From Octopus sinensis (lineage: Eukaryota), in contig NC_043002.1 in the NCBI RefSeq assembly GCF_006345805.1, forward strand, positions 35,402,001 to 35,466,000: DNA of 64,000 nt. The letters run 5' to 3'. Made by a program: the position numbers and the translations under genes. Positions 10,108 through 63,546 of the stretch are shown here, one piece after another. The notes beneath the pieces are model-generated. The model did no database searches, was not told where the DNA came from, and saw only the letters and a program-made list of their open reading frames with translations. Positions within the stretch are counted from its first letter, which is position 1. Each line of letters starts with the position of its first letter.

Positions 10108-10365
10108 AAAAAAAAACAGTCTGATCTGGCGGTGTTTCTACAGCTGGACGCCCTTCCTGACGCCAACCACTCCGTGAATGTAGTGGGTGTTTTTTACGTG
10201 CCACCTGCACAGGTGCCAGACGAGGCTGGCAAAAGGCCACGATTGGATGGTGCTTTTTACGTGCCACTGGCACGGGGGCCAGACGATGCTGGCAACGGCC
10301 ACAATCGGATGTTGCTTTTTACGTGCCACCGGCACGGAGGCCAGTCGGGGCCACATTCTAGTAGT
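10108..10365 (-). mobile_element. RTE LINE 3'-UTR fragment
   Basis: TTTCTACAGCTGGACGCCCTTCCTGACGCCAACCACTCC plus ~57-bp GTGCCAC repeats, matching the UTR attached to the RTE at 35453-36892. Confidence 0.85.
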
Positions 10366-11830: not shown

Positions 11831-12412
11831 ATTGATCAATTTTAGTCAAAGCTACAACTTTAAATCTGTCCAGAGTTATTTCTTCAATTTTCCCCATTGA
11901 TAACGGCTAAAGAGCTAGAAATGCAGTATCTGGGAATCTGAAAGGCTGCAGCACTGGACAGATATGATATTTTTACGTCTTTACTATAAGAGAGAATTTT
12001 TCTCCAAGAAAATGGCAGTGAATTTGCCTTTAGGTTAGTTAAAATATGTTTGTGACATTTCGACTTCTAAAGTTAACTTTAAAAAAAAATTTTTTGACAG
12101 TTTTCAATGTTATTAGGAATAATTTAATTGAACATTTTTTTTTCTATAAATTTCAGAATAGATGTATTCTGCTGTGTATACCATTCTTTTGGAAATGTTT
12201 AAGCATGTTTTCTATGGTACATAGACTTTACATCCTTGTTTGTATATTACTGATGCGTAAGTATATTTTTGTGGTAGTTCTTTTGTAAATTTTTTCTAAT
12301 TTAAAATATCTTGTTTATGAAAATGGTGAGGAAACACATGGACTGAAAGATTTTAGGAATTAAAATGAATAGTTTCAGCCCTAACCTAACAGTATTTATG
12401 ATGTACTTTTAA

Positions 12413-13920: not shown

Positions 13921-14127
13921 AACTTTTTATTAGTTATGAATTATTTTTAAAATCTTCAAGTAAAAAACTGCCTATAGATCAGTCCCAAAATTTTCAAGTA
14001 AAACACCGTCAAAAGAGAAGTTTGTCATCATCTGAGAAACAAACACCATATAGAACGCTCCTTCAGCATCCAAGAGTGATTAAAGCATGTGAAGGGTTTT
14101 GTGCAGCATCATCACAAAAATACAAAG
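13921..14127 (+). CDS. PXYLP1: Putative stem-region exon of the PXYLP1-like gene
   Basis: Acceptor TTATATTTCAG at 13920; open frame LFISYELFLKSS...RVIKACEGFCAASSQKYK(G). Ends at a phase-1 AAG|GCAAGT donor that joins in frame to 15794. Confidence 0.7.
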
Positions 14128-14269
14128 GCAAGTTTTATTTTCTCTAAAATTTCTGTTTACTAAAATGAAGTCAAACTATGTATGGCACTATTCATTTGCA
14201 CAATGGTTGGAATTTCATGGTTTGATATAATTACTAGGGTAACATGTACATGTATTTATGTATATGTAA

Positions 14270-14640: not shown

Positions 14641-15793
14641 GTATGTGAGGGTTCCTCTGTATGTGTGTCTTGAGCAATTAGATTATAGGATTGACTCTGA
14701 TCCCACCCCACTACATACAGGGGTTTGGGGATTAGGGTTTGGTCAAGAAGTAACTAATTTTAGCATCACATTTAGGCTTCACCCAATTTTCACCCATTAA
14801 TATACTCCTAAACTTCCCCTAACGGGTTTAATCTAAGTTATTTCTGCCAACTCCTTTTATAATGCTATTTCTACTAAATAGCGGTTAACATCTAACCTCT
14901 AACCCCTGTAACATTGACCAAACCATTAAACCCACCACATAACAAGCTATTTCCCCCCAGTATAATGGAAACACAATGTAAACTGCAACCGTAGAAATTC
15001 TTCCTAAATGTGACTTTATTCATGTACTTACCACAGGATGGAATACCATGGATTATATTAACACCTTAATTGAAGTCCTTATCTTACCTTTCCTTACTAT
15101 GTTTATCACATTATTTTATTTTATTTTACTCTACTTTATTTTTTTAACTAACTTTCACACATGTTAGTTCCCTAACATTTGGACCCTCTGAAGAAGCTTA
15201 GGGGCACACCCATTATCCAAGCCCTGTCCAATGTCTGTCCATCCCTGTATATCACTGATGTGAAGAAAACTTGGAGGTTTTTGTTGCCTTATGGTAGAAA
15301 CGGCTGTAAGGGATTAGTGCCTGTACATTCATATATTATTATTCATTTGTTTCTATATATGTGCCCCCCCCCCCCAATCCACTCCTAATTCTTTAGCCAG
15401 GGCTCATACTGGAAGACACTTGTCCAAAGTCCCATGCAGTGTAACTAAACCCAGAACCATGTGGTTAGAAAGCAACTTCTTACCACTTGGCTATGCCTGT
15501 ACCTATACAGCTGTTCCTTAAGTAGGTTGTTAGGTCTGTGTTTGTTTAGAACTATAATTATTAATTCAATTAATTTCATATGAAATTCACATTAAAAATT
15601 ATTAGTTGTTACTATTCTAGAATAATTTTCAATATGGAATTAAAAATGTTTTTTCATTTTATATATATATATATAAAAACAGTAAATTGTTTTTCAAAAT
15701 TTATATAAATTTTAATTTATTGTGAAATTGAACAAAACTCTGCTATTCATATTTATCTTTTCAGTGTTTGATTTATTTTTCATTCAAATATAG

Positions 15794-16974
15794 GTAATTT
15801 CAACAGGCTTTTTTCTGGCTACAAACTTGTTCAAGTTCATACTTTCTTCAGTTCTGGACAAACTCTACCAGAAGAATTACCTGCACTCAGATCACCAATG
15901 ATTACCTGTATGATAACAAATCTCTTATCAAATAATCCTAAAGTAAGGTTATTTGAAGAGAGTATTTCTTTATACAAGAAGCTTCAAAAAAGACCCAGTA
16001 GTTTAAAAATATTCCCACCAACATCTAGAAAACCTGTTTGCTTTTTAGGAGACCTTACACCTTTTGGAATCCTTCAACAAATTGAGCATGGTGAATTTTT
16101 GAGAGAAGTTTATAGTCATAGGCTGAAGAATACATCTCCTGAAAAGTTGTTTACCATACAGACCATTCCAGAAAAACTTCAGTACCAAAATTCTCTTGCT
16201 TTTGCAGTTGGCTTTCTTACACAGAAACAATTTAGTCGTATACATGTTGGTAAATCTCTTCCAGATTTTGCTTCTAGGTCCATGAATAAACATCTTAATT
16301 GTCCTAAATTAAATATGCATTCTTCACAAGTTGAAAATGCTATAAATTCTGGTCAGTTTATCTTTAAAGAAGCTCATCCATCCACCAAACGTTTAGTTAG
16401 CCTTTTTAATTCTACAGATATTATTAAATCTTCTTCATTGGAAATTCTTCAGTCTACTTTATCTTACTTGTGCAATAAAATCTCTCCTGTTTGTCATAAG
16501 GATAAACCTTGCATAAGAATTACACCCAAGGGGTTAACAGAAACTGTCAGAATGACTGACAGCTACTTCAAAAATCTCATTGTAAACCCCCTGTTTACCG
16601 AAATTTCAAAGTTGTCTACATTTCCAGCTTTGCAGGGAATTATGGAAAGTATCCACAATAGTAAAATATTTTTCCATACATATTCCTCCAAGCTTTCTTT
16701 TCTATTGTATTTGCTTCGAACTCTGGGGCTCACAATTACTGAAAGGCCTGTGTCAGTCAGTCATTTCATTTTTGAAGTTTATGCTAATAGTGAAGGCTCA
16801 AAATTTTTCCGTATCCTTTTTAATGGTGAAGACTTAACAAATAAAGTGCTCTCTTGTAAGAATACTGCAGCTTCATTCTCAAATCTCTGTCCGCTAAGCA
16901 TTTTAAATAATTTTATTACTCATGGAATATTTGAACAATTTAAAAGTCCAACCTACACAGGAGCATGTGAGTAG
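15794..16974 (+). CDS. PXYLP1: Large terminal exon of a 2-phosphoxylose phosphatase 1-like protein (histidine phosphatase branch 2) lacking catalytic motifs
   Basis: Acceptor TAG at 15791-15793; frame is open upstream of the listed ATG (GNFNRLFSGYKLVQVHTFFSSGQTLP). CFLGDLTPFGILQQIEHGEFLREVY, RILFNGEDLT..VLSC and LCPL..L..F...IF....YTGAC are collinear with PXYLP1 as recalled (CEMGELTQTGVVQHLQNGQLLRDIY; RILYNGVDVT; MCPLENL...YYDAC). Confidence 0.9.
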
Positions 16975-19447: not shown

Positions 19448-22084
19448 TTACTTCATGCTTTATTTTAACTAGTTTTATTCAGATAATTTTATCTTTTGAT
19501 GAAAAAAAAAAAGTAATTAAATTAAAAATAGTAAGATGTTAAAGTGCAGATGAACAGATGTAATATGTATGAATTTAGCTAATAAAACTGGAATAAGTGT
19601 GTGTAGGTCTAGTGGTTGTAAAACAATATATTCAGGATAATAGAATTCTAACATTTGATTCTTTGTTCAGTTATTTGTCACATTGCTTCTAATTTTCAGA
19701 GTGCCATATACAGTAGCAGTTAGTCCCTAACCACTAAGCTGACTTCTCAAATTGAGTTTTGATTTTAAATTGTAATCATTTTTGTGTTATTTGTACTGCT
19801 CTAGAAAAAAGCATATATGTCAGTCTCATTTTCTTTGTATCTTTTCAATTCGAGATCTTGTGCCTATGACATAAATATTCACAAAATATCAGTTGTCAAA
19901 CAGCATCAAGAGGTAAGATCACTAAATTTAGTGAAAAATTTTAGATGCATCGTTGTTGTCAAAATCATTCTTTTACATCTGTTTTCCATATTACCATAAT
20001 TTTGACAAGTTGTTATAGTCTGAGTTACCGAGTCGGTACTTATTCAATTATTGTCCTCTTTGACAGGTTGGAAGACCAAATTCTTATTTGTACATTCCAC
20101 TTTTGGCATGGTTTCTTTGACTGGGTGCCCTTAGCACCAACTTCAGTGTGTACTGGGTGCATTCTATTGTAAAATAAACGTTAAAGAAGTTCATATCCTT
20201 GGTCAGATTAAGGACCTTCTCAACCCTATGTTGCTTTTGTTTATTTGTCAACTATTACTATTTGTATTCTATCTTTCATGTGGACTAGCATTGCTACCTG
20301 TTCTTACTATGGTTACTATGCTTTTAGAGTGCATACTCTAAAAGCCACTGCAAATTATGTCACCTTAGTAACAAAAGCTTTCAACTGCTTCTAGGGAAAT
20401 GTTCAGGTATAATAAATTTTACTTGTGCTCTTAGTGCTTACTGTGCCTGTATATCTTGCACAAATGAAATGAACTTTCTGTTAGCCTATCTGTGATCTCA
20501 CTATACCTTTTGTATGTCCATAGCTTACACTAGATGCATTAACGAATTTCTATCTACTTGTTTTCTGCATATTGAACTTAGATAATTTCCTGATGGTTGC
20601 ATGACCCCATTTTTATTATTTCTATATATAAGCCTATAATCTTTGCTTACTTTACTGTAAGAGCTTCTGATTATTTCAGTTACATTTAGAGACTTTTCTT
20701 TGAAGCTCTAAAGTGCTAATATTTAATTACCTTTCCTAATTAATAGCATTCTAGTTCCAAAAGAAAACATACAGCAATGTTTATACTTACTTATGGTAAA
20801 TATTAAAAATATAAAGTTTGCTTTATTTGACTTAGATATCCTATTATTAAATTTATTTTAAAATTATAGTTTTTTTCTTTACGTCAGTGTTCTACTTTTC
20901 TAAAATATTTTCATGACTAATTATGTTACATATTCATTTGTCTGTCTGTCATCTAATTTGGGATTGTATATAAAATAAGATCACATACAGAGTGTATTAG
21001 CATGTATATATAATGCATACACAGGTTTGTGTATTAATTTATGTCTATTATATGCAGTTATGACAGTTTAATTTATACATACACATAACTCGCATACAAG
21101 TGAGTTAAATACATTGGATGATTGTTATTCATGCTTCTTTTATACAATTAAGAAATAATAAAATAAATGTTGGTGTGTAAAAATTTATCACTGAATGTGT
21201 TCATCTGTGCAGGATTGGAGAAATCTTTGATATTTTGGCAGTAACAAGTTGGGCAAAATACCTTGTATTTAGATCTCATGTTGATTAAAATACTGTTAAA
21301 TTTTAGTGAGCCTTGTCAGTAAAATCACACCAGCAATTGAATAACCATACTACCTCCCTATAAATTTGGCCACTTATTGAAGTATGGATCCTCAGCTTTT
21401 CAACTTTTTCAGTAATCCTTTAATAAATAAAAAACAAATCACTTCAGCATTTTAGTGTTCTGAACATCAGATTTATAATCTACAAAAAAAAAAAAAAATA
21501 AATAAATAAACTAATTTCTTTCATTTTTGAATACACATTACTTGAATTATTTTGGAATCGAATACAGCTGTGTTACAAAATTTTAATCTTTATCCATGTA
21601 ATTAAAAGCATTGGATTGAGATTAGTTTTTATTAATGAACTTTTATCTTTCTTTAAAAATAAAAAATAATAATAAAAACCTGGTATTCAAAACAAAATCT
21701 GAAGACTTGTTTTTGAGAAAGGGGTTATGTGGCTAAATTTGTAGTTTGTGTCAAAGAAATAATAATTATTATTGTCAATGATGAAAGTGAAACGGTAGTA
21801 TTGGACGTTGGTACGTGGTTCCTTTTTTTTTTTTTTAACCTTCTCTAGGAATAATAAAATATGTTCAGTGAATATAAATTGATAGCACAAATCTAAATTA
21901 GTTTTGTGTTGGTACAGCTGTGGATTCCTAATGAACACTGTCTCTACATGTGTTGTCAGAAACTTGCAATAAAAACATGGTCTTGCTACTATGCTGAATA
22001 AAGCATTAGCTAGCTCAATTTTCACGTTACTGGGTTGTTTAAAGATTTCTCCTTTTCTGTTCAGATGTTTAGTCAGTATCTCTT

Positions 22085-22121
22085 GATACAGCTGACCACA
22101 GCCAGTGAGCTGAGCAGCATC
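22085..22121 (+). promoter_or_regulatory. IRE-like RNA hairpin 1
   Basis: GCUG-ACCA-CAGC-[CAGUGA]-GCUG-AG-CAGC; member of a five-copy family. Confidence 0.4.
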
Positions 22122-22396
22122 TGTGATACTTTATAATATATCATTGTAATAATCTTTTTTATACAGACACATTATGAAAAAAATTTCTGTGCATGTTATG
22201 TTGGATTTTTTCTTTTTTGGATTCAAACAGGCACAAAAACAACATCACACATTCATATTTCATTACATTTTCATATATTTATTGTTTTTTTTTTTTGATA
22301 ACAATGTATTATTTTTTATATATTATTTTTATTTTATCATTTTTTCCCCCTTTTGATTAAAGAGGGATTAGATGCCCCCTTATATACTAATGGCTA

Positions 22397-23419: not shown

Positions 23420-24232
23420 GTACTCTCTTTTACTTGGTTCAGTCATTTGACTGCGGCCATGCTGGAGCACCGCCTTTAGTCGAGCAAATCGACCCTGGGG
23501 CTTATTCTTTGTAAGCCCAGTACTTATTCTATCGGTCTCCTTTGCCGAACCGTTAAGTGACGGGAACGTAAACACACCAGCATCAGTTGTCAAGCAATGC
23601 TAGGACAAACACACACACACACATACATATATATATATGAATGGAAATTGCAGCTGAGTTACCAGTGCCGGTGGCATGTAAGAGCACCATCCGAATGTGG
23701 CCGTTGCCAGCGCCACTCTGACTGGCCTCGTGCCGGTGGCACGTAAAAAGCACCATCCGTTCGTGGCCGTTGCCAGCCTCGCCTGGCCCCCGTGCCGGTG
23801 GCACATAAAAAGCACCATCCGATCGTGGCCATTTGCCAGACTTGTCTGGCACCTGTGCCGGTGGCACGTAAAAAGCACCCACTACACTCATGGAGTGGTT
23901 GGCGTTAGGAAGGGCATCCAGCCGTAGAAACATTGCCAGATCAAACTGGGCCTGGTGCAGCCTTCTGGCTTCCCAGACCCCAGTTGAATCGTCCAACCCA
24001 TGCTAGCATGGAAAGCGGACGCTAAACGATGATGATGATGATGATATACATACATACATACATATAAACGACAGGCTTCTTTCAGTTTCCGTCTACCAAA
24101 TCCATTCACAAGGTATTGGTCGGCCCGGGGCTATAGCAGAAGACACTTGCCCAAGATGCCACGCAGTGGGACTGAACCCGGAACCATGTGGTTGGTTAGC
24201 AAGCTACTTACCACACAGCCACTCCTGCACCT
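23420..24232 (-). mobile_element. tRNA-SINE split by an RTE 3'-UTR insertion
   Basis: SINE tail half at 23420-23625 and head half at 24046-24232 flank the insertion, which sits in the SINE's central CA/TA tract. Confidence 0.9.
23640..24045 (+). mobile_element. 5'-truncated RTE LINE (3' UTR only)
   Basis: GGTGGCAC repeat units, CCATGCTAGCATGG palindrome and (GAT)n tail. Confidence 0.9.
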
Positions 24233-31018: not shown

Positions 31019-33765
31019 CATCCACACCTCCCACACTCTCAGGGTGGGCACCCTCAACGTTGGCACATTGAAAGGTAGGTCTGGCGAGATAGTCGAGATG
31101 CTTGAACGGAGACGTGTTGATGTATGTTGTATGCAAGAAATAAGGTGGAGAGGAGGATCTGCTAGGGTCCTCACAGGCAAGGAACACAGGTACAAGATTT
31201 TCTGGGCAGGGAACACTGACGGGGTTGGTGGCGTGGGTATACTTATCGCTGAGAAATGGATAGATAGAGTAATTGAGGTAATCAGAGTAAGTGACAGAAT
31301 ACTTAAGATTAGAATAGTGCTTCATAATAGATTAGCAACCATTATATCGGCCTATGCCCCTCAGCCAGGGCTACCCGATGGACAGAAAGACAGTTTCTAT
31401 GACACCCTACTGCAGACCACCTCATCGACGAACGACAGGGACCTTCTCTTTGTGGCTGGTGATTTCAATGGGCATGTTGGACGACATGCTGGGGGCTTCC
31501 ATGGCGTACATGGAGGCTACGGTTATGGTTCCCGCAACGAGGAGGGAACCAGGCTGCTGGAGTTCTGCGATGCGAATAGTCTTATGGTCTGCAACACTAA
31601 CTTCAGGAAACCAACAAGCCACCTGGTCACCTACCGATCGGGCCGGCATACTAGCCAAATCGACTACATCCTTGCCAGAAAAAGGGAAAGATGGCTGCTT
31701 AAAAATGCCAAAACCTTCCCAGGCGAAGAATGCACCCCACAACATAGACTGGTAGTTAGTGACTTTAGGATCAGGACTAAGAGGGCGACTAGAAGACGAC
31801 CAACACGGAGAAGAAGGGTCTGGGAGCTTAAAGCCCCTGCGAATGGACAGAGATTTAGAGATATGTTACTTGAAGCCTTTGACGAAGTGGAAGGGGGTAT
31901 AGCTACACATGGGGTAGAAGACAACTGGACGTTTCTGAGGGACAACCTGCTGAAAGCCGCTGACCAGATCTGTGGCTGGTGCAAAGTCCCCTTAAGACCC
32001 AAAATAACGTGGTGGTGGAACAATATTGTTGACAGGGCTATTAGACAAAAGAAACAGGCTTGGAAGGCCTGGAAGAACGGTGGTAGCAGGGAAGGGTATC
32101 AGACTGCCAGAAGGGAAGCTAGGAGACAGGTCTATCTAGCCAGAGGGGAAGCAGATAAGAGAAAATTTGCCAATGTCCTGCGCCGTGAGGATGAAAGACT
32201 TGAGGTATTTCGTGTTGCAAGACAGTGTGTGAGAGAGAATCGTGATGTGGTAGGAGAGAAATGTGTTCGCATGGAGGATGGTTCACTTGCGCTAAATGAG
32301 GATGCAAAGAGAGAAGCTTGGAGACGCCACTATGAAAGGTTACTGAATGAGGAAAATGAATGGGATAAAGAGAGTCTGCCGAATGTTGACTCTACAGAGG
32401 GACCAGCTATCCGAGTTGATAGTTCCGTGGTAGCTAAGGCAATTAGAAGCATGAAGACAGGGAAAGCCCCAGGCCCATCAGGAATTACTGCAGAGATGCT
32501 CAAAATATCTGGCAGTGTCGGCTATAACCTAGTCACCCGTATAGTCAACCAGGTGATACACGAAGGAGTCATACCCAATGACTGGTGCAGCAGCATACTA
32601 GTCAACTGCTACAAAGGTAAAGGTGATGCCCTAGATACAAATAATTACAGAGGTATCAAGCTGTTGGATCAAGTAATGAAGGTTACGGAGAGGGTCATAG
32701 CCCAACTAATTAGAGAGAGAGTTAGTTTAGATGAGATGCAGTTTGGGTTCGTGCCAGGGAAAAGTACCACTGATGCTATATTCCTGGTAAGGCAGCTGCA
32801 GGAGAAATACCTAGCCAAAGATAAGCCCCTGTACCTGGCTTTCGTTGACATGGAGAAAGCTTTTGATAGGGTCCCCCGATCCCTTATCTGGTGGTCAATG
32901 AGGAAACTAGGGATAGATGAATGGCTGGTGAGGACTGTGCAAGCCATGTACAGAGATGCCGTAAGTAAGGTTAGGGTTGGCAACATGTACACAGAAGAAT
33001 TCAAAGTAGAGGTTGGGGTCCACCAGGGTTCAGTACTCAGCCCCCTCCTATTTATCATAGTACTCCAGGCAATTACGGAGGAATTCAAGACAGGCTGTCC
33101 CTGGGAGCTCCTCTACGCTGACGACCTTGCTCTTATTGCTGAGTCACTATCAGAACTGGAGGAGAAGTTCCAGGTGTGGAAGGAGGGTTTAGAATCAAGG
33201 GGCCTTAGAGTCAACCTAGCTAAAACCAAAGTACTAATAAGTAGAAAGGTAGACAATCCACAAATATCTTCAGGAAGATGGCCCTGCTCGATCTGTAGAA
33301 AAGGTGTAGGTAGAAACTCTATAAGATGTACCCAGTGTAAGCTATGGACACATAAGAGGTGCAGCAATGTCAAAGGTAGGCTAACTGGGAAGATAGTTTT
33401 TGTATGTGGCAGATGCTCGGGAGCATTAACCTCCGAAAATCTGCAGAAAACAACTTCCGTCACTTTCCAGGGGGAAAAACTAGAAGTAGTTGATAGCTTC
33501 CGTTATCTAGGTGACCAAGTCAGTAGTGGGGGTGGGTGCGCTGAAAGTGTAACTGCTAGAATAAGAATAGCCTGGGCAAAGTTTAGGGAGCTCTTACCTC
33601 TGCTGGTGACTAAAGGCCTCTCGCTCAGAGTAAAAGGCAGACTGTATGATGCGTGTGTACGAACAGCCATGCTACATGGCAGCGAAACATGGGCTGTGAC
33701 TGCTGAGGACATGCGTAAGCTCGTGAGGAATGAAGCCAGTATGCTCCGATGGATGTGTAATGTCA
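31019..33765 (+). mobile_element. Young RTE-clade LINE: uninterrupted ORF with APE endonuclease, RT and Cys/His finger; both ends missing
   Basis: GTLNVGTLKG, QEIRW, GDFNGHVG, QIDYIL (EN); QFGFVPGKST, FVDMEKAFDRV, HQGSVLSP, LLYADDL (RT). Homology stops at TGTAATGTCA, 33765; the last ~35 codons of the listed ORF are flanking DNA. Confidence 0.97.
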
Positions 33766-34222
33766 AACTACTAATGGACAAATATAAAATACAGAAAGAT
33801 AAAAATAAAATATGTGTCCGACTAAAAAGATTTTATCAGATGATTAAAATCTTAAAAAAAATTTTTTTTTAATATTTGAAAAAGTCTTTAACTTCCATCA
33901 TACAAGTACGTCCAAAAGTTCATAAGTAAGCAGACTTCCCAAGGTCAAATTCATATATATATATATAGGTATGTCGCATTTTGTATTTTATATATATATG
34001 TATATGTGTTTCAATGTGAGTTAGATGTTGAGCGTGACCAAATAAGGGATAGTACCTATCCAATATACTGCTGGCAGTGTACCCAAATATTCATATGCAA
34101 GTGCTAGTTATTGCGTGGCAATCTCACAATTGAGTGTTATATATGGGCAGGGGTAAAAAGTGGTTTACCCTTGATTTATAAGCAAATATCCTCTCCACTT
34201 TCTCATTTGCTGTATATATATT

Positions 34223-37249: not shown

Positions 37250-37888
37250 TTTTATTCCCAACTTTTGTCATCGTTAACAACCTTCGAAAGAAGGTCCGGA
37301 TCAACTTCCAACTGTTCTTTCAGTTCACCACATGCATTCAGTCGTGCCTGCTTTTGATCTTCCGTGAAGAACAAATTTTGCTGCAACTCTTTTCATTCGC
37401 GTTTCCTCACCCAAAAATTCATTGGTTGGAGCTTCCAGGGCACACCATTCATATCAGCATGTTCATCAATGAATTTTCATATTTTCATTTAGTAGGTCAA
37501 TGAGTGCCCTGTATGAGGTTGGTCTTCAAATGACAAGTGGCCATTCATAAAGTGTGAAAACCACTCATAAACTAGTGTTTTGCTGATGGTAGTGTCCTTG
37601 TAAGTTGTTCAAAGCATGACAACTGTTTCAGCTGTCATTTTTCCCAGCAGAAAACAGAATTTCATGGAATCACACTATTACTTCATTTCAGCCATTGCAA
37701 AAGTTGATGAACAGCAGAGAAGCACAGTAAAATAAAGAGACAATTACATGGCAGTACAACTTCACTTGATGTTGCTGGTTGGCAGATTGATGCCTGAGGG
37801 TCACATCAAGTGGCTTCTAGTGGCAGAAGTCTGAACTACAACGGGCTTGTTCCACAGAAAACGTTTCTGGCCACTTTTGGTACCACCT

Positions 37889-37891
<3 letters not shown>
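37250..37891 (-). mobile_element. mariner 5' remnant
   Basis: Minus-strand TIR TACAAGGTGGTACCAAAAGT; MKFCFLLGK..AETVVML, YEWFSHF, TEDQKQARLNACGELKEQLEVDPDLLSKV with stops. Confidence 0.8.
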
Positions 37892-37924
<33 letters not shown>

Positions 37925-37927
<3 letters not shown>

Positions 37928-38856
37928 GCAGACAGAAACAAAATGCAACTGAATGAGGGAAAATTTGAGCTGATGCATTTTGGAAGAAATTCCTCACTAA
38001 AACAACCATACTCTCTTCCTTCAGGGGAACCGCTCACAGCCTCTAACAATATCAGAGACCTGGGTGTAATTGTTGATGACGATCTCAGTTGGAGTGCACA
38101 CATCAACAAGAAGGTCGATACAGCTCGTAGGATGAGTTCCTGGATCTTAAGAACTTTCCGGTCCAGAGAACAAGGAGTCATCATACCACTTTTTTCATCC
38201 TTTGTACGGCCACACCTTGAATACTGCTGCCCACTGTGGTCTCCTCACACAAGACAAAACATCTCCAGAATTGAGTCACCCCAGAGGGCTCTCACTAAAC
38301 AAATTGAAGGCATGGCTGCTCTCGATTATTGGGATCGCCTTAAAGCCTTGAAACTTTACTCCCTCCAGCGTCGCCGTGAGCGGTACATCATTTGTACGAT
38401 GTGGAAAATATACCGCCAACTTTGCCCAAACGACCTAAACATTAGCTTCAAGGTTCATCCGAGACTTGGACCACGGGCTATACGTCCCCTGCCAAATTCA
38501 AGATCACAACATACATGTACACTGCAACATAATTTCTTTTCCTCAACAGGCCCTGCCCTATTTAACATTGTCCCGAGGGAGATCAAAGAGGAAAAGGATC
38601 CCATCAACTTCAAACAGAGTCTGGATAGATTCCTTCAAAGAATACCAGATAAGCCACCCATAATTGGATACAACTCACCCAACAAGAACTCACTACTTGA
38701 ACAAAACTGGATACAACTCACCCAACAAGAACTCACTACTTGAACAAAACTTGACTTAAACAGGATTCGAATAATCCTATCAGGTGGTGCTATTAAGTTA
38801 GACATGGCCTGGACCAATCTCTGGTCGAAACATATCTAAGTTTTATCTAAGTTTTA
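37925..38856 (+). mobile_element. 5'-truncated CR1-clade LINE with open C-terminal ORF
   Basis: WADRNKMQLN..KF, RDLGVIVD, FVRPHLEYCCPLWSP, LYSLQRRRERY; tail (TATCTAAGTTT)n; perfect 43-bp tandem duplication at 38665-38750. Confidence 0.92.
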
Positions 38857-50204: not shown

Positions 50205-51460
50205 ATCATCATCATCATCATTGTTTAACATCCGCTTTCCATGCTAGCATGGGTTAGACGATTTTGACTGAGGGCTAGCGAACCAGATGGCTGCACCAGG
50301 CACCAATCTTGATCTGGCAGAGTTTCTACAGCTGGATGCCCTTCCTAATGCCAACCACTCCAAGAGTGTAGTGGGTGCTTTTTATGTGCTACTGGCATGG
50401 GGGCCAGTCAGCCGGTACTGGCAACGACCTCACTCAAATCTTTTTATACATGCCACCGGCACAGGTGCCAGTAAGGTGATGCTGGTAACGATCACACTCG
50501 AATGGTGCCTTTTACGTGTCACTGGCATGGAAGCTAGTTAGCCGCTCTGGCAATGATCACGTTCGGATGGCGCTCTTAGCACCCTACTATCACGGGCACA
50601 AGTGCCAGTAAGACGATGCTGGTAATGATCCCACGCGAATGGTGCCCTTTATGTGCCACTGGCACAGAAGCCGGTTAGCCGCTCTGTCAACGATCACACT
50701 CGTGTGGTGCTCTTTGCACCCCGCTAGCGTGGATGCCAGTCATCGAATTGATTTTGATTTTGATTTCACTTGCCTCAACAGGTCTTCGCAAGCATAGTTT
50801 AGTGACCAAAGAAGGAAAAGGTATGCATAAGCGGGCTGGTTACACTCCTGGCATAGGCCACAGGTTATGGTCTCATTTGGCTTGCCGGGTCTTCTCAAGC
50901 ACAGCATATTTCCAAAAGTCTCAGTCACTAGTCATTTCCTTGGTGAGGCCTAATGTTCAAAGACTGTGCTCCACCACTTCATCCCAGGTCTTCCTGGGTC
51001 TACCTCTTCCACAGGTTCCCTCAACTGCTAGGGTGTGGCACTTTTTCACACAGCTATCCTCATCATTCTCACCACATGACCATACCAGCACAGTTATCTG
51101 CTTCCCCTCTGGCTAAATAAACCTGCCTCCTAGCTTCCCTTCTGGTGGTCTGATACACTTCCCTGCTACCACCGTTCTTCCAGACCTTCCAAGCCTGTTT
51201 CTTTTGTCTAATAGCCCTGTCAACAACATTGTTCCACCACCACGTCATTTTGGGTCGAGAGGGTACTTTGCACCATCCACAGATCTGGTTGGTGGCCCTT
51301 AGCAGGTTGTCCTGTAGGAACCTCCAGTTGTCTTCTACAACATGTGAAGCTTTATCCCCTTCTATTTCATCAAAGGCTTCAAGTAATATATCTCTAAATC
51401 TTTGTCCATTTCCAGGATCTTTAAGTCTCCAGACCCTTCTTCTTGCTGGTGGTCTTCTGG
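50205..51460 (-). mobile_element. RTE LINE with 3' UTR and a large internal deletion
   Basis: (CAT)n tail and UTR at 50205-50940, ORF end to ~51090, then a jump to the EN-RT linker region (PSRPKMTWWWNNVVDRAIRQKKQAW). Confidence 0.9.
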
Positions 51461-51837: not shown

Positions 51838-52410
51838 TCATCATCATCATTATCGTCATTGTTTAACGTCTGTTTTCCATGCTAGCATGGGTTGGATGGT
51901 CTGACTAAGGTCTGGAGAGCCAGCGGCTGCACCAGGCTCCAATCTGATCTGCCAATGTTTCTACAGCTGGATGCTCTTCCTAATGCCAATCCCTTCGAGA
52001 CTGTAGTGGGTTCTTTTTACATGCCACTGGCACAAGAGCCAGTCAGGCAGGCTTGGCATCGATCACATTCAGATAATGCTTTTTACGTGCCATTGGCTTG
52101 GGAGCCAGTCAGCGGGTACTGGCATCAGCCACACTTTGATGATGCTTTTTACATACCACCAGCATGGGAGCCAGTCAGGCCACATTCGGATGATGCATTT
52201 TACGTGCCACTAGAATGGGAGCCAGTCAGGGGGCCCAGGCATCAATCACATTTGGGTAGTGCTTTTTATGTGCCACTGGCACAGGAGGCATTGGCCACGT
52301 TCGGATGGTGCTTTTTACATGCCACCAGCATGGGAGCCAGTCAAGAGACACTGGCCACAGCTATGATTTAGGTTTTACTTGATTCAACAGGTCTTCTCAA
52401 GCATATCATA
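51838..52410 (-). mobile_element. RTE 3'-UTR copy with about six repeat units
   Basis: (CAT)n, CCATGCTAGCATGG and repeated TTTTACGTGCCA...GGAGCCAGTCAG. Confidence 0.88.
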
Positions 52411-61246: not shown

Positions 61247-62183
61247 TCATCATCATCATCATCATCGTTTAGCGTCCGCTTTCCATGCTGGCATGGGTTG
61301 GACGGTGCAACTGGGGTCTTGGAAGCCAGAAGGCTGCACCAGTCCCAGTCTGATCTGGCAATGTTTCTACAGCTGGATGCCCTTCCTAACGCCAACCACT
61401 CCATGAGTGTAGTGGGTGCTTTTTACGTGCCAGACGAGGCTGGCAAACGGCCACGGTCGGATGGTGCTTTTTACGTGCCACCGGCATGGAGGCCAGGCAA
61501 GGCTGGCAATGGCCACGATCGGATGGTGCTTTTTACATGCCACCGGCACGGAAGCCAGTCGGGGCGGCGCTGGCAATGGCTACGTTCGGATGGTTCTCTT
61601 ATGTGCCACCGATACTAGTATCACAGCTACAATTTCCATTCATGTTGATCGATTTTGATTTTTGATTTTTTGATTTTTTGATTTTCACTTGCCTCAACAG
61701 GTCTTCACAAGTAGGGTTTTGTGTCCCAAGAAGGAAACGTATGCATAAGTGAACTGAGGCCATGGGATATGGTCTCACTTGTCCTGCTGGGTCTTGTCAC
61801 ACACAGCATACTTCCAAAGGTCTCGGTCTCTAGTCATTTCCTCGGTGAGACCTAAAGTTCGAAAGTCATGCTTCCCCACCTCATCCCAGGTTTTCCTGGG
61901 TCTGCCTCTTGCACAGGTTCCCTCAACAGCTAGGGTGTGGCACTTTTTCACGCAACTATCTTCATCCATTCTCGCCAAATGGCCATACCAGCGCAAATGT
62001 CTCTCTTGCACACCGCAACTGATGCTTCTTAGGTCCAACTTCTCTCTCAAGGTACTTACACTCTGTCGAGTATGAACACTGACATTACACATCCATTGGA
62101 GCATACTGGCTTCATTTCTTGCGAGCTTACGCATATCCTCAGCAGTCACGGCCCATGTTTCACTGCCATGTAGCATGGCTGTT

Positions 62184-62187
<4 letters not shown>
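61247..62187 (-). mobile_element. 5'-truncated RTE LINE with open C-terminal ORF and 3' UTR
   Basis: TAMLHGSETWAVTAEDMRKL...RWYGHLARMDED...GRPRKTW; (CAT)n at 61247. Confidence 0.95.
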
Positions 62188-62262
<75 letters not shown>

Positions 62263-62269
62263 TATATAT

Positions 62270-62570
62270 CACGTGACTGACCAGGCTATCAGATGTTGCT
62301 ACACATCGCTGGTCACAATGCGCTTCGCATTGTTTTAGCCTTCAAATGACGCCACCCCGCTGGCTAAGCGAGCAGTCCAACAGAAGAAAGAGTGAGAGAA
62401 GGTTGTGACGAAAGAGAACAGCAGGGATTGCCACCATCCCCCTGCTGGAGCCTCGTGGAGCTTTAGGTATTTTCGCTCAATAAACACTCACAATGCCTGG
62501 TCTGGGAATTGAAACCGCGATCCTATGACTGCGAGTCCGCTGCCCTAACCACTAGGCCATTGCGCCTCCA
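62270..62570 (-). mobile_element. tRNA-derived SINE (third family)
   Basis: Reverse-complement head GGCGCAATGGCCTAGTGGTTAGGGCAGCGGACTCGCAGTC...GGTTTCAATTCCC. Confidence 0.85.

Positions 62571-62689: not shown

Positions 62690-63546
<857 letters not shown>

What the first reader, a model, noticed from the sequence alone, without database searches (positions are those of the whole stretch)
15794..16974. Intact PXYLP1-like gene with all catalytic residues replaced: candidate Golgi pseudophosphatase
Seen: extending the ORF upstream gives YKLVQVHTFF-SSGQTLP, a later QTIPEK-L-QYQNSLAFAVGFL and YS-SKL-SFLLYLLRTLGL. Established: branch-2 histidine phosphatases need RHGxRxP (phospho-His), a further Arg and the HD motif. 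In PXYLP1 as I recall it these read FKLVSVHVFI-RHGDRYP, TTGKS-R-TLQSGLALLYGFL and YSA-HD-VTLSPVLSALGL. The alignments are gap-free, giving RH..R to SS..T, R to L and HD to KL, while the ~390-codon exon has no stops and keeps the family cysteines and C-terminus. Inference: a folded, catalytically dead PXYLP1 kept under selection. PXYLP1 dephosphorylates xylose in the glycosaminoglycan linker and associates with GlcAT-I, so a dead version could act as a scaffold, glycan binder or regulator of proteoglycan synthesis. I am not aware of a description of this in cephalopods.
Basis: partly seen in the sequence, partly recalled or inferred. Interest (0 to 1): 0.8.

Follow-up and report, generated by a model that had tools for sequence, protein, structure and literature searches.

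The report
Dead PXYLP1-like phosphatase gene, mollusc-wide
This octopus gene encodes a well-folded copy of the Golgi sugar-phosphatase PXYLP1 in which every catalytic residue has been replaced; it is real, kept by selection, and belongs to an apparently undescribed family of such 'dead' copies that sits beside the working enzyme in clams, snails and cephalopods.

Summary
Window 15794-16974 (+) is the last coding exon of a three-exon gene, 100% identical to Octopus sinensis XP_036359722.1 ('2-phosphoxylose phosphatase 1-like', 479 aa, not 498). It aligns without gaps to true PXYLP1, and all six catalytic or phosphate-binding residues are replaced: RHGDRxP becomes SSGQTLP, Arg becomes Leu215, and HD becomes Lys386-Leu387.

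The protein still looks functional:
- An AlphaFold model is confident (pLDDT 87) and matches histidine acid phosphatases.
- The family cysteines are kept.
- dN/dS is 0.35 between Octopus species and 0.14-0.27 among decapod-like relatives, whose copies are spliced transcripts.

An intact PXYLP1 exists separately in cephalopods (the octopod Argonauta hians and a cuttlefish-containing cluster).

The main correction is scope. The dead form is not cephalopod-specific. At least 33 representative sequences with the same three losses form one clade (NJ bootstrap 90). Every named member is a bivalve, gastropod or cephalopod, and each of those lineages also has an intact paralogue. In Patella the two genes lie 118 kb apart.

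I read it as an ancient molluscan pseudoenzyme of the secretory pathway. Its function is untested; a non-catalytic binding or regulatory role is my inference. I found no paper describing it. Novelty: new variant of a known kind. Interest is moderate.

The parts
12205..12256 (+). Coding exon 1. It holds the start codon and MFSMVHRLYILVCILLM, the first part of the N-terminal hydrophobic helix (residues about 2-29), a signal-anchor of type II membrane-protein style.
   Evidence: tblastn of P0007/P0001. The sequence shows ATG at 12205 and donor ATGC|GTAAGT. The AlphaFold model has helix 2-29. Kyte-Doolittle maximum is 2.1 at residue 8.
13921..14127 (+). Coding exon 2. It covers the rest of the anchor, a disordered stem and the start of the folded domain (conserved Cys74/Cys78). 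It ends at a GC-AG donor (AAAG|GCAAGT).
   Evidence: tblastn and sequence. The GC donor is identical in O. sinensis, O. vulgaris and O. bimaculoides. pLDDT is below 50 for residues 31-57.
14007..14018 (+). Codons for R47-Q-K-R50, followed by S-L. This is a dibasic, furin-type motif in the disordered stem and a possible shedding site.
   Evidence: The motif is RQKRSL in O. sinensis, CQKRSL in O. vulgaris and HQKRSL in O. bimaculoides, and RSKRSL in four decapod-like sequences. The Patella dead copy has RVKRSN. Cleavage is not tested.
15794..16974 (+). Coding exon 3, the finding itself. It encodes residues 87-479 plus the stop codon, which is almost the whole histidine-acid-phosphatase-like domain.
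   Evidence: Open frame. 100% identity to XP_036359722.1 over 393 aa. Homologous to the large last exon of intact PXYLP1 in Argonauta. 95.6% nucleotide identity to O. bimaculoides, against 88-93% in the flanks and introns.
15850..15870 (+). Codons AGT TCT GGA CAA ACT CTA CCA, giving S106 S107 G108 Q109 T110 L111 P112. They sit on the RHGDRxP signature: the nucleophile His becomes Ser and both Arg are lost.
   Evidence: In 95 intact relatives R and H are 100% conserved at these columns. In the dead clade they are S/T and mostly P.
16177..16179 (+). Codon for L215, sitting on the invariant phosphate-binding Arg of the ...SRTYQS... motif.
   Evidence: Arg is 100% conserved in intact relatives; the dead clade has A/S/L/V/E.
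16690..16695 (+). Codons for K386 L387, sitting on the HD motif (His plus the proton-donor Asp).
   Evidence: His is 100% conserved in intact relatives; the dead clade has D/K/E.

Best explanation
**What it is.** The locus is the Octopus member of an old molluscan paralogue family of the Golgi enzyme PXYLP1 (2-phosphoxylose phosphatase). It arose by DNA-level, probably local, gene duplication before bivalves, gastropods and cephalopods diverged.

**What changed.** In the common ancestor of the family all residues that bind and transfer phosphate were lost: both Arg and the nucleophile His of RHGxRxP, the downstream Arg, and the His and Asp of the HD motif. The protein therefore cannot carry out the phospho-histidine chemistry of its family.

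**What was kept.** It retains the N-terminal signal-anchor, the luminal disulfide-bonded histidine-acid-phosphatase fold and N-glycosylation sequons. It has stayed under purifying selection, though evolving about five times faster than the active paralogue.

**Most likely mechanism (inferred, not shown).** It acts in the secretory pathway as a non-catalytic binding protein. The former active-site cleft or another retained surface binds a partner: either the protein partners known for PXYLP1 (the linker glucuronyltransferase B3GAT3/GlcAT-I, or CSGALNACT1) or an unphosphorylated glycan. In that way it would tune glycosaminoglycan chain initiation rather than dephosphorylate xylose. A conserved dibasic site in the disordered stem suggests the domain may be released as a soluble form.

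**Confidence by step.**
- Real, expressed, selected gene: about 0.95.
- Inactive as a histidine phosphatase: about 0.85.
- Acts on the glycosaminoglycan-linker machinery: about 0.25.
For: **Identity and structure of the gene**
- 100% match to an annotated O. sinensis protein, with three coding exons.
- It has the same three-coding-exon layout, with a large last exon, as intact PXYLP1 in Argonauta.

**Catalytic loss**
- HMMER, MAFFT and hhalign agree on the register.
- R, H, R and H are 100% conserved in 95 intact relatives and absent from 33 dead ones.

**Fold**
- AlphaFold2 gives pLDDT 87.3 and pTM 0.83.
- The top Foldseek PDB matches are ACP6 (4job, E 9.5e-14), prostatic acid phosphatase, bacterial histidine acid phosphatases and phytases.
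- Eight cysteines are shared with intact PXYLP1.

**Selection**
- Nei-Gojobori dN/dS is 0.35 (bootstrap 95% interval 0.21-0.68) for O. sinensis vs O. bimaculoides, and 0.14-0.27 among decapod-like sequences.
- The exon is more conserved than its flanks.

**Expression**
- P0002 and P0003 are full spliced ORFs on 1.8-4.2 kb RNA-seq-type contigs. P0003 is indexed in 31 blocks of the collection.
- A genomic relative has a roughly 4 kb intron at the octopus intron-2 position.

**Family**
- 33 of 35 triple-dead representatives form one bipartition (NJ bootstrap 90/100), and the internal topology follows gastropods, bivalves and cephalopods.
- Named members come from Potamilus, Mactra, Mercenaria, Ylistrum, Mya, Dreissena, Haliotis, Patella, Littorina, Aplysia, Physella and Octopus.
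- The same genera have intact copies.
- The Patella caerulea pair is 118 kb apart on one strand; the Littorina pair is 1.9 Mb apart on one chromosome.

**Intact cephalopod paralogue**
- P0183 (Argonauta) and P0031 (whose cluster includes Sepia pharaonis PXYLP1) carry RHGDRTP, SRTYQS and SGHDVT.

**Pathway background**
- PXYLP1 partners with B3GAT3 and CSGALNACT1, and its dosage controls glycosaminoglycan output (PMC11625870; PMC12110425).
Against: - No biochemical test exists, so catalytic death is inferred from sequence. Enzymes thought dead have sometimes proved active through other residues.
- Localisation is inferred only from an N-terminal hydrophobic helix and homology.
- The family evolves fast. 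Octopus vs decapod-like sequences are 43-47% identical, against 81-86% for the intact paralogue; dN is 0.42-0.44 against 0.09; mean column identity across molluscs is 24%. That fits poorly with binding a slowly evolving Golgi enzyme partner, and fits better with a lineage-variable or extracellular ligand.
- I saw no direct expression evidence for the Octopus gene itself. There are only gene models in three genomes, and transcripts in other cephalopods.
- The intact paralogue was shown in an octopod (Argonauta), but I could not confirm it by name in O. sinensis.
- NJ could not place the dead clade relative to the intact sequences, because of long-branch effects. The timing of the duplication before the three classes split is therefore a lower bound only.
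Confidence: 0.6

Rival explanations
1. It is a secreted or shed binding protein whose role has nothing to do with the glycosaminoglycan linker. The duplicate kept only the stable fold and was recruited to bind some other ligand outside the Golgi, for example in extracellular matrix, mucus, or immune or reproductive fluids.
For: - It evolves fast relative to the intact paralogue (dN 0.42-0.44 vs 0.09).
- Identity across molluscs is low (24% mean column identity).
- A conserved dibasic RxKR|SL motif lies in a disordered stem just after the membrane anchor in all cephalopod copies and in Patella. Cleavage there would free the domain.
- Dreissena has extra copies.
- All phosphate-binding residues are gone, so the ancestral ligand cannot be bound in the ancestral way.
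Against: - There is no evidence of secretion.
- The dibasic motif is imperfect in O. vulgaris and O. bimaculoides, which keep KR but lack the P4 Arg. Most non-cephalopod members lack it.
- A full-text search joining 'phosphoxylose phosphatase' with mollusc, oyster, octopus, shell-matrix and mantle terms listed no paper containing 'phosphoxylose phosphatase' among its top results.
Confidence: 0.28
2. It is still an enzyme. The cleft has been rebuilt around other residues and carries out different chemistry, or it retains weak phosphatase activity by a non-canonical route.
For: - The cleft-lining motif xPG[QH] and YQS..AF.HG are conserved within the dead clade.
- A few positions are gained clade-wide: Pro at the former His, two Lys, one Phe.
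- Purifying selection acts on the whole domain.
Against: - The replacements at the six catalytic columns are not conserved as any one chemistry across the clade. The HD columns read D/K/E plus varied residues; the Arg column reads A/S/L/V/E. A new active site should be conserved.
- Octopus itself differs from most members (SS rather than SP; KL rather than DE/KY).
- No nucleophile candidate is invariant.
Confidence: 0.08
3. It is a decaying pseudogene or an annotation or assembly artefact.
For: - The Pfam score is below threshold.
- The catalytic residues are lost.
- Intron 2 has a non-canonical GC donor.
Against: - The frame is open in three Octopus genomes and in four decapod-like sequences.
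- dN/dS is 0.14-0.35 with confidence intervals below 1.
- Spliced transcripts exist in relatives.
- The fold prediction is confident.
- The clade has persisted across three mollusc classes.
- The GC donor is conserved, and GC-AG is a known minor intron class.
Confidence: 0.02

Closest known systems
PXYLP1 (2-phosphoxylose phosphatase 1, formerly ACPL2), the Golgi type II histidine acid phosphatase of the glycosaminoglycan linker pathway
   Same: - Clear homology over about 415 columns (hhalign probability 100%, E 4.7e-64).
- Same N-terminal anchor plus stem plus luminal domain layout.
- Same conserved cysteines and C-terminal ...Y..AC motif.
- Same exon layout, with one large last exon.
- Linked to the intact gene in Patella and Littorina.
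   Different: - Only 20-24% identity to intact PXYLP1.
- All six catalytic or phosphate-binding residues are replaced.
- It forms a separate clade and coexists with an intact PXYLP1 in the same lineages.
- It evolves about five times faster.
- It is a paralogue, not the orthologue.
Solved branch-2 histidine acid phosphatases: human ACP6 (4job), prostatic acid phosphatase (2hpa, 1nd5), bacterial histidine acid phosphatases and phytases
   Same: Predicted fold: Foldseek probability 1.00, E 1e-13 to 1e-10, TM-score about 0.65 normalised to the target.
   Different: - 10-17% identity.
- The sequence search of PDB finds nothing.
- It has extra helical insertions and an N-terminal anchor.
- It has no catalytic residues.
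Pseudophosphatases in general (STYX, MK-STYX, myotubularin-related proteins, inactive D2 domains of receptor tyrosine phosphatases, PHLPP2)
   Same: The concept is the same: a conserved phosphatase fold with a mutated catalytic motif, retained by selection and acting by binding or regulation (reviews and papers listed).
   Different: - Those belong to the cysteine-based PTP/DUSP or the metal-dependent PPM/PPP families and are cytoplasmic signalling proteins.
- This one is a luminal or secretory branch-2 histidine phosphatase.
- Seven papers contain both 'histidine phosphatase' and 'pseudophosphatase', and none of the six listed concerns PXYLP1.
FAM20A, the secretory-pathway pseudokinase paralogue that activates FAM20C; FAM20B of the same family is the xylose kinase opposing PXYLP1 (from my own knowledge of the literature, not tested here)
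   Same: It is a precedent for a Golgi or secretory pseudoenzyme paralogue that regulates its active relative by complex formation, in a neighbouring branch of the same pathway.
   Different: - Different fold and different chemistry.
- FAM20A keeps nucleotide binding, whereas this protein has lost its phosphate-binding residues.
- No interaction with active PXYLP1 has been shown.

Membership tests
Histidine phosphatase superfamily, branch 2 (Pfam His_Phos_2, PF00328) | Sequence match to the family profile above the curated threshold | tested here: not met
   The octopus exon scores 19.3 bits (E 8e-4) against a cut-off of 23.6. The Patella dead copy scores 31.7 bits and intact Argonauta PXYLP1 119 bits. 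Homology is nevertheless secure by profile search and hhalign.
Histidine phosphatase superfamily, branch 2 | The alpha/beta core plus helical cap fold of histidine acid phosphatases | tested here: met
   AlphaFold2 model with pLDDT 87.3 and pTM 0.83. The 50 Foldseek PDB matches listed are all histidine acid phosphatases, phytases or related branch-2 enzymes, the best at E 9.5e-14. This rests on a predicted structure, not a solved one.
Histidine phosphatase superfamily, branch 2 (as an enzyme) | RHGxRxP motif with the nucleophile His and two phosphate-binding Arg | tested here: not met
   The motif reads S106 S107 G108 Q109 T110 L111 P112. Only the Gly and Pro survive.
Histidine phosphatase superfamily, branch 2 (as an enzyme) | Downstream phosphate-binding Arg (PXYLP1 ...SRTxQS...) | tested here: not met
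   Leu215 occupies the column, which is 100% Arg in 95 intact relatives.
Histidine phosphatase superfamily, branch 2 (as an enzyme) | HD motif (His plus the proton-donor Asp) | tested here: not met
   Lys386-Leu387 occupy the columns, and the His column is 100% His in intact relatives.
PXYLP1 orthologue group | Groups with PXYLP1 of other animals as the single orthologue of its genome | tested here: not met
   It falls in a separate clade of dead sequences (bootstrap 90). A distinct intact PXYLP1 exists in cephalopods (P0183 from Argonauta; P0031, whose cluster includes Sepia). It is a PXYLP1-derived paralogue.
PXYLP1 orthologue group | Type II membrane topology with a luminal catalytic domain, and Golgi localisation | tested here: inconclusive
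   There is an N-terminal hydrophobic helix at residues 2-29 followed by a disordered stem, two N-x-S/T sequons, and conserved cysteines. All of this is consistent with that topology. Localisation cannot be tested with these tools.
PXYLP1 orthologue group | Dephosphorylates 2-O-phosphoxylose of the linker; binds GlcAT-I | not testable with these tools
   This needs enzyme assays and pull-downs. The background comes from PMC11625870 and PMC12110425.
Pseudoenzyme (pseudophosphatase), working definition | Homologous to an enzyme family, lacks its essential catalytic residues, yet is conserved under purifying selection and expressed | tested here: met
   - Homology.
- Loss of residues.
- dN/dS 0.14-0.35.
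- Transcripts in decapod-like relatives.
- Expression of the Octopus gene itself and actual lack of activity were not tested.

The most novel reading that the evidence does not exclude
Molluscs carry a dedicated, very old (pre-dating the bivalve/gastropod/cephalopod split) pseudoenzyme partner of the glycosaminoglycan-linker machinery. This dead PXYLP1 copy would compete with, or act allosterically on, active PXYLP1, GlcAT-I or CSGALNACT1. It would thereby set how long xylose stays phosphorylated, and so how many chains, and of which type, are made. That would be a regulatory layer of proteoglycan synthesis with no known counterpart in vertebrates, analogous to FAM20A acting on FAM20C.
Probability: 0.2. 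Interest if true: 0.7.

Novelty: new variant of a known kind. Interest (0 to 1): 0.5.

Why it matters
PXYLP1 and the kinase FAM20B form the phosphorylation switch that decides whether a proteoglycan linker is extended or capped. How cells tune that switch is an open point in glycosaminoglycan biology.

A conserved, catalytically stripped copy of the phosphatase, present next to the working enzyme in three mollusc classes, is a natural candidate regulator and is directly testable.

It would also add a luminal branch-2 histidine phosphatase to the catalogue of pseudophosphatases. In the papers I retrieved, that catalogue concerns cytoplasmic PTP/DUSP and metal-dependent families.

There is a practical consequence. 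Automated names such as '2-phosphoxylose phosphatase 1(-like)' on these mollusc proteins assign an activity they almost certainly lack. Pathway reconstructions in molluscs should count only the intact paralogue.

If the function turns out to be unrelated to proteoglycans, the finding is an ordinary, though old, case of a duplicated enzyme fold reused as a binding module.

Tried and rejected
- **PDB sequence search.** Searching with the exon gave only chance-level hits (ephrin receptor kinases, E about 0.7). This was uninformative; the fold search was needed.
- **Word-indexed search with the 31-sequence dead-clade profile.** Only the 8,000 candidates sharing most words were scored, and it returned six proteins. 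It added Littorina but wasted a capped search. I inferred taxonomic breadth from cluster look-ups instead. So 'molluscs only' rests on 12 named genera among 33 representatives. The unnamed members (Logan and ENA) could include other phyla.
- **Intact paralogue in the window.** tblastn with intact cephalopod, limpet and chiton PXYLP1 finds only the dead exon, at 23-24% identity. The intact gene is not in these 64 kb.
- **Dead gene near the intact gene in Argonauta.** It is not within the 104 kb locus fetched around the intact gene.
- **Placing the dead clade.** NJ attaches it to fast-evolving arthropod and tunicate sequences, a long-branch artefact. I draw no conclusion about whether the duplication is mollusc-specific or older.
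- **Identifying the species behind P0002, P0003 and P0004.** A literature search for the run accessions found nothing. I call them 'decapod-like' only because they form the sister group of Octopus and are about 45% identical to it.
- **Pseudogene or artefact reading.** Rejected on dN/dS, the conserved open frame, transcripts and the fold.
- **RNA editing restoring the catalytic residues.** AGT TCT (Ser-Ser, 15850-15855) has one A; A-to-I editing gives GGT (Gly), and no editing path leads to Arg-His.
- **Model coordinates.** They were not available to scripts, so I could not measure the geometry or charge of the vestigial pocket.
Full report
**1. What is at the coordinates**

Window 15794-16974 (+) is a single open exon. 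A polypyrimidine tract and acceptor (...ttcaaatatag|GT) end at 15793, and the frame then stays open for 392 codons plus a split first codon up to the TAG at 16972-16974. In DNA of about 34% G+C roughly 7% of random codons are stops, so an open run of this length is not a chance event (my arithmetic, of order 1e-13). It is the second-longest ORF in the whole window, after a retrotransposon ORF.

The exon is 100% identical over 393 residues to XP_036359722.1, '2-phosphoxylose phosphatase 1-like [Octopus sinensis]' (P0007). It is 99.7% identical to the O. vulgaris protein CAI9724621.1 and 93% to the O. bimaculoides protein XP_052824878.1. The window is therefore from O. sinensis or something indistinguishable from it.

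It is encoded by three exons:
- 12205-12256
- 13921-14127, whose donor is a GC-AG type (AAAG|GCAAGT) conserved in all three Octopus genomes
- 15794-16974

.

**2. Are the catalytic residues really gone?**

A primate PXYLP1 retrieved here (P0234) reads FKLVSVHVFIRHGDRYP, TTGKSRTLQSGLALLYGFL and YSAHDVTLSPVLSALGL.

Three independent alignments put the octopus residues on the same columns without gaps:
- HMMER alignment of 162 proteins to a cephalopod profile
- MAFFT of ten dead and intact sequences
- hhalign of a 31-sequence dead-clade profile against a 20-sequence intact PXYLP1 profile (probability 100%, E 4.7e-64, 415 aligned columns)

| Catalytic element in PXYLP1 | Octopus residues | Window coordinates |
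|---|---|---|
| RHGDRxP | S106 S107 G108 Q109 T110 L111 P112 | 15850-15870 |
| Arg of SRTxQS | L215 | 16177-16179 |
| HD | K386 L387 | 16690-16695 |

Among 95 intact relatives the two motif residues R and H, the downstream R and the HD histidine are each 100% conserved. No alternative RHG or HD exists elsewhere in the protein.

**3. Is it still a protein that matters?**

*Fold.* An AlphaFold2 model built on the dead-clade alignment is confident (mean pLDDT 87.3, pTM 0.83). It has a long N-terminal helix (residues 2-29), a disordered stem (31-57) and a compact domain. Foldseek against the PDB returns 93 matches at E of 0.001 or better. All 50 matches listed are branch-2 histidine phosphatases: ACP6 (4job, E 9.5e-14), prostatic acid phosphatase, bacterial acid phosphatases, phytases and glucose-1-phosphatase. 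Eight cysteines, the fold-core glycines and the C-terminal Y..AC are shared with intact PXYLP1. Two N-x-S/T sequons are present.

*Selection.* Nei-Gojobori estimates on the large exon:

| Comparison | dS | dN | dN/dS (bootstrap 95% interval) |
|---|---|---|---|
| O. sinensis vs O. bimaculoides | 0.088 | 0.031 | 0.35 (0.21-0.68) |
| Three decapod-like orthologues, pairwise | – | – | 0.14-0.27 (upper bounds 0.38 or lower) |

At the DNA level the exon is 95.6% identical to O. bimaculoides, while the introns and flanks are 88-93% identical.

*Expression.* The two full-length relatives P0002 (499 aa) and P0003 (494 aa) lie as uninterrupted ORFs on 1.8-4.2 kb contigs assembled from sequencing runs, and P0003 is indexed in 31 blocks of the collection. 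A genomic relative (L001) has about 4 kb of intron exactly where octopus intron 2 lies. The short contigs are therefore spliced mRNAs. For Octopus itself I have only gene models from three genomes.

**4. Is there an intact paralogue?**

Yes, in cephalopods. P0031 (547 aa) belongs to a 90% cluster that includes 'PXYLP1 [Sepia/Acanthosepion pharaonis]'. P0183 is '2-phosphoxylose phosphatase 1-like [Argonauta hians]', from an octopod. Both carry RHGDRTP, SRTYQS and SGHDVT, and P0183 scores 119 bits on Pfam His_Phos_2.

The intact gene is not in this window. It has the same layout of three coding exons with a roughly 410-codon last exon, so the dead gene arose by DNA duplication, not retroposition.

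Across the octopod/decapod split, dN over the large last exon is 0.091 for the intact gene (86% amino-acid identity). For the dead gene it is 0.42-0.44 (43-47% identity). The dead copy evolves about five times faster, yet is clearly constrained.

I could not confirm by name that O. sinensis has the intact copy. The Argonauta protein's 90% cluster has nine members, which I could no longer list.

**5. The main surprise: it is not a cephalopod peculiarity**

A profile search of 1.84 billion representative proteins found 368 relatives. The best non-cephalopod hits (E 7e-59 to about 1e-30) all lack the same three motifs. They typically read [ST]PG[QH] for RHGD, a small or aliphatic residue for the Arg, and D/E/K plus a varied residue for HD. 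Intact PXYLP1 sequences begin only at E 5e-34.

In a neighbour-joining tree of 132 hits, 33 of the 35 triple-dead sequences form one bipartition (bootstrap 90/100). Inside it gastropod, bivalve and cephalopod sequences form separate groups, and the cephalopod group has 100/100 support.

Every member with a public name is a mollusc:
- Bivalves: Potamilus, Mactra, Mercenaria, Ylistrum, Mya, Dreissena (two copies)
- Gastropods: Haliotis, Patella, Littorina, Aplysia, Physella
- Cephalopods: Octopus

The same genera also have an intact PXYLP1.

In Patella caerulea the intact and dead genes lie 118 kb apart on the same strand of one chromosome. In Littorina saxatilis they are 1.9 Mb apart on one chromosome. 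This fits an ancient local duplication.

The catalytic loss therefore happened once, before these three classes diverged. NJ could not place the clade relative to non-mollusc PXYLP1 because of long-branch attraction, and 21 of the 33 representatives are unnamed. I cannot say whether the family is older than, or wider than, conchiferan molluscs.

**6. How it most likely works**

*Shown here:*
- a real, selected gene
- a histidine-acid-phosphatase fold (predicted)
- no residue left that could bind phosphate or form the phospho-histidine intermediate
- an N-terminal signal-anchor
- an intact paralogue in the lineage

*Established background.* PXYLP1 removes the 2-O-phosphate that FAM20B puts on linker xylose. 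It works in complex with B3GAT3 (GlcAT-I) and also with CSGALNACT1, and its dosage changes glycosaminoglycan output (PMC11625870; PMC12110425).

*Inference.* The dead copy is a luminal or secreted pseudoenzyme that acts by binding. Since both Arg of the RHGxRxP motif, the downstream Arg and both His are gone, a phosphate-dependent 'substrate trap' is unlikely. Protein-protein competition or scaffolding, or binding of an unphosphorylated glycan, is more plausible. I put about 0.25 on a role in the linker pathway.

The fast evolution of the family argues for a serious rival: a shed or secreted binding protein with an unrelated ligand (0.28). So does a conserved dibasic motif in the disordered stem of the cephalopod copies. 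It reads RQKR|SL at 14007-14018 and RSKR|SL in decapod-like sequences; Patella also has RVKR.

A rebuilt active site is unlikely, because the replacement residues are not conserved as any one chemistry across the clade. The pseudogene reading is excluded.

**7. Comparison with what is known**

It works like a pseudophosphatase. It is not a member of the PXYLP1 orthologue group, and as an enzyme it fails all three defining motifs of branch-2 histidine phosphatases. It belongs to that superfamily by descent and fold.

The pseudophosphatases in the papers I retrieved are cytoplasmic PTP/DUSP, myotubularin or metal-dependent enzymes. Full-text searches found no description of a dead PXYLP1 or ACPL2, and none of the six listed papers containing both 'histidine phosphatase' and 'pseudophosphatase' concerns PXYLP1. 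The library is incomplete, so absence is not proof.

The nearest conceptual precedent, from my own knowledge, is FAM20A. It is a secretory-pathway pseudokinase that regulates its active paralogue.

**8. Verdict**

The scope changes from 'a cephalopod oddity' to 'an ancient molluscan pseudo-PXYLP1 family'.

The genes are already in databases under automated names that imply an activity they almost certainly lack. The pseudoenzyme status and the family appear undescribed.

- Novelty: new variant of a known kind.
- Interest: 0.5. This is a clean, testable pseudoenzyme in a pathway with an open regulatory question, but its function is unknown and pseudoenzyme paralogues are a common evolutionary outcome.

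Noticed in passing
window 14128-14133 (donor of intron 2); L009 and L010 at the same site: Intron 2 of the gene uses a GC-AG donor (AAAG|GCAAGT). The donor is identical in O. sinensis, O. vulgaris and O. bimaculoides. The decapod-like genomic contig L001 has a canonical GT donor at the homologous junction.
   Followed up: partly
window 14007-14018 (residues 47-50): A dibasic furin-type motif, RQKR followed by SL, lies in the stem that the model predicts as disordered. The K-R-S-L part is conserved in all cephalopod copies, and Patella has RVKRSN. It may be a shedding site that would release a soluble domain.
   Followed up: partly
window 31044-33872 (+): An uninterrupted 942-aa ORF of a non-LTR retrotransposon. 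It has an Exo_endo_phos endonuclease (E 6e-9), RVT_1 reverse transcriptase (E 8e-32) and a weak PHD/C1-like zinc finger. It looks like a possibly intact LINE copy. The ORF at 61775-62272 (-) shares a near-identical peptide with its C-terminal part (TAMLHGSETWAVTAEDMRKL). Another long ORF at 37847-38743 (+) has no Pfam match.
   Followed up: partly
window 10186-10351, 23661-23879, 50454-50721, 52013-52178, 61429-61558, 63076-63274: A family of short tandem arrays with units of about 62-66 bp (137 bp at 50454), containing GGTGCTTTTTACGTGCCACCGGCAC... It occurs in both orientations and accounts for the G+C-rich, GC-skewed stretch around 10-12 kb. It is probably a dispersed octopus repeat element.
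   Followed up: no
window about 15945 and 22050-22133 (+): The O. vulgaris annotation has a second, 159-aa product (CAI9724620.1, P0006). It leaves exon 3 at an internal donor and ends in a short exon about 6 kb downstream. This would give a truncated protein lacking almost the whole domain. It could be real alternative splicing or a model artefact.
   Followed up: no
related proteins P0040 (Mercenaria mercenaria) and P0060: These otherwise intact PXYLP1 sequences read HHGD instead of RHGD: the first Arg of the catalytic motif is replaced while His, the downstream Arg and HD are kept. This may be a partially altered active site in a bivalve 'live' copy.
   Followed up: no
L012/L013 (Patella caerulea JAZGQO010000010.1, 50.86 and 50.99 Mb); L014/L015 (Littorina saxatilis CM074568.1, 43.05 and 41.16 Mb): The intact and dead paralogues are linked in two gastropods: 118 kb apart on the same strand in Patella, and 1.9 Mb apart on opposite strands in Littorina. 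In the bivalves Mercenaria, Mya and Dreissena they sit on different chromosome-scale contigs. Dreissena has two dead copies.
   Followed up: partly
related protein P0141 (417 aa, unnamed): This sequence lies outside the main dead clade but has SGKKS..FLYLL at the HD site, resembling the cephalopod SGKYSFLLYLL. It could be a divergent cephalopod-type paralogue or a convergent loss.
   Followed up: no
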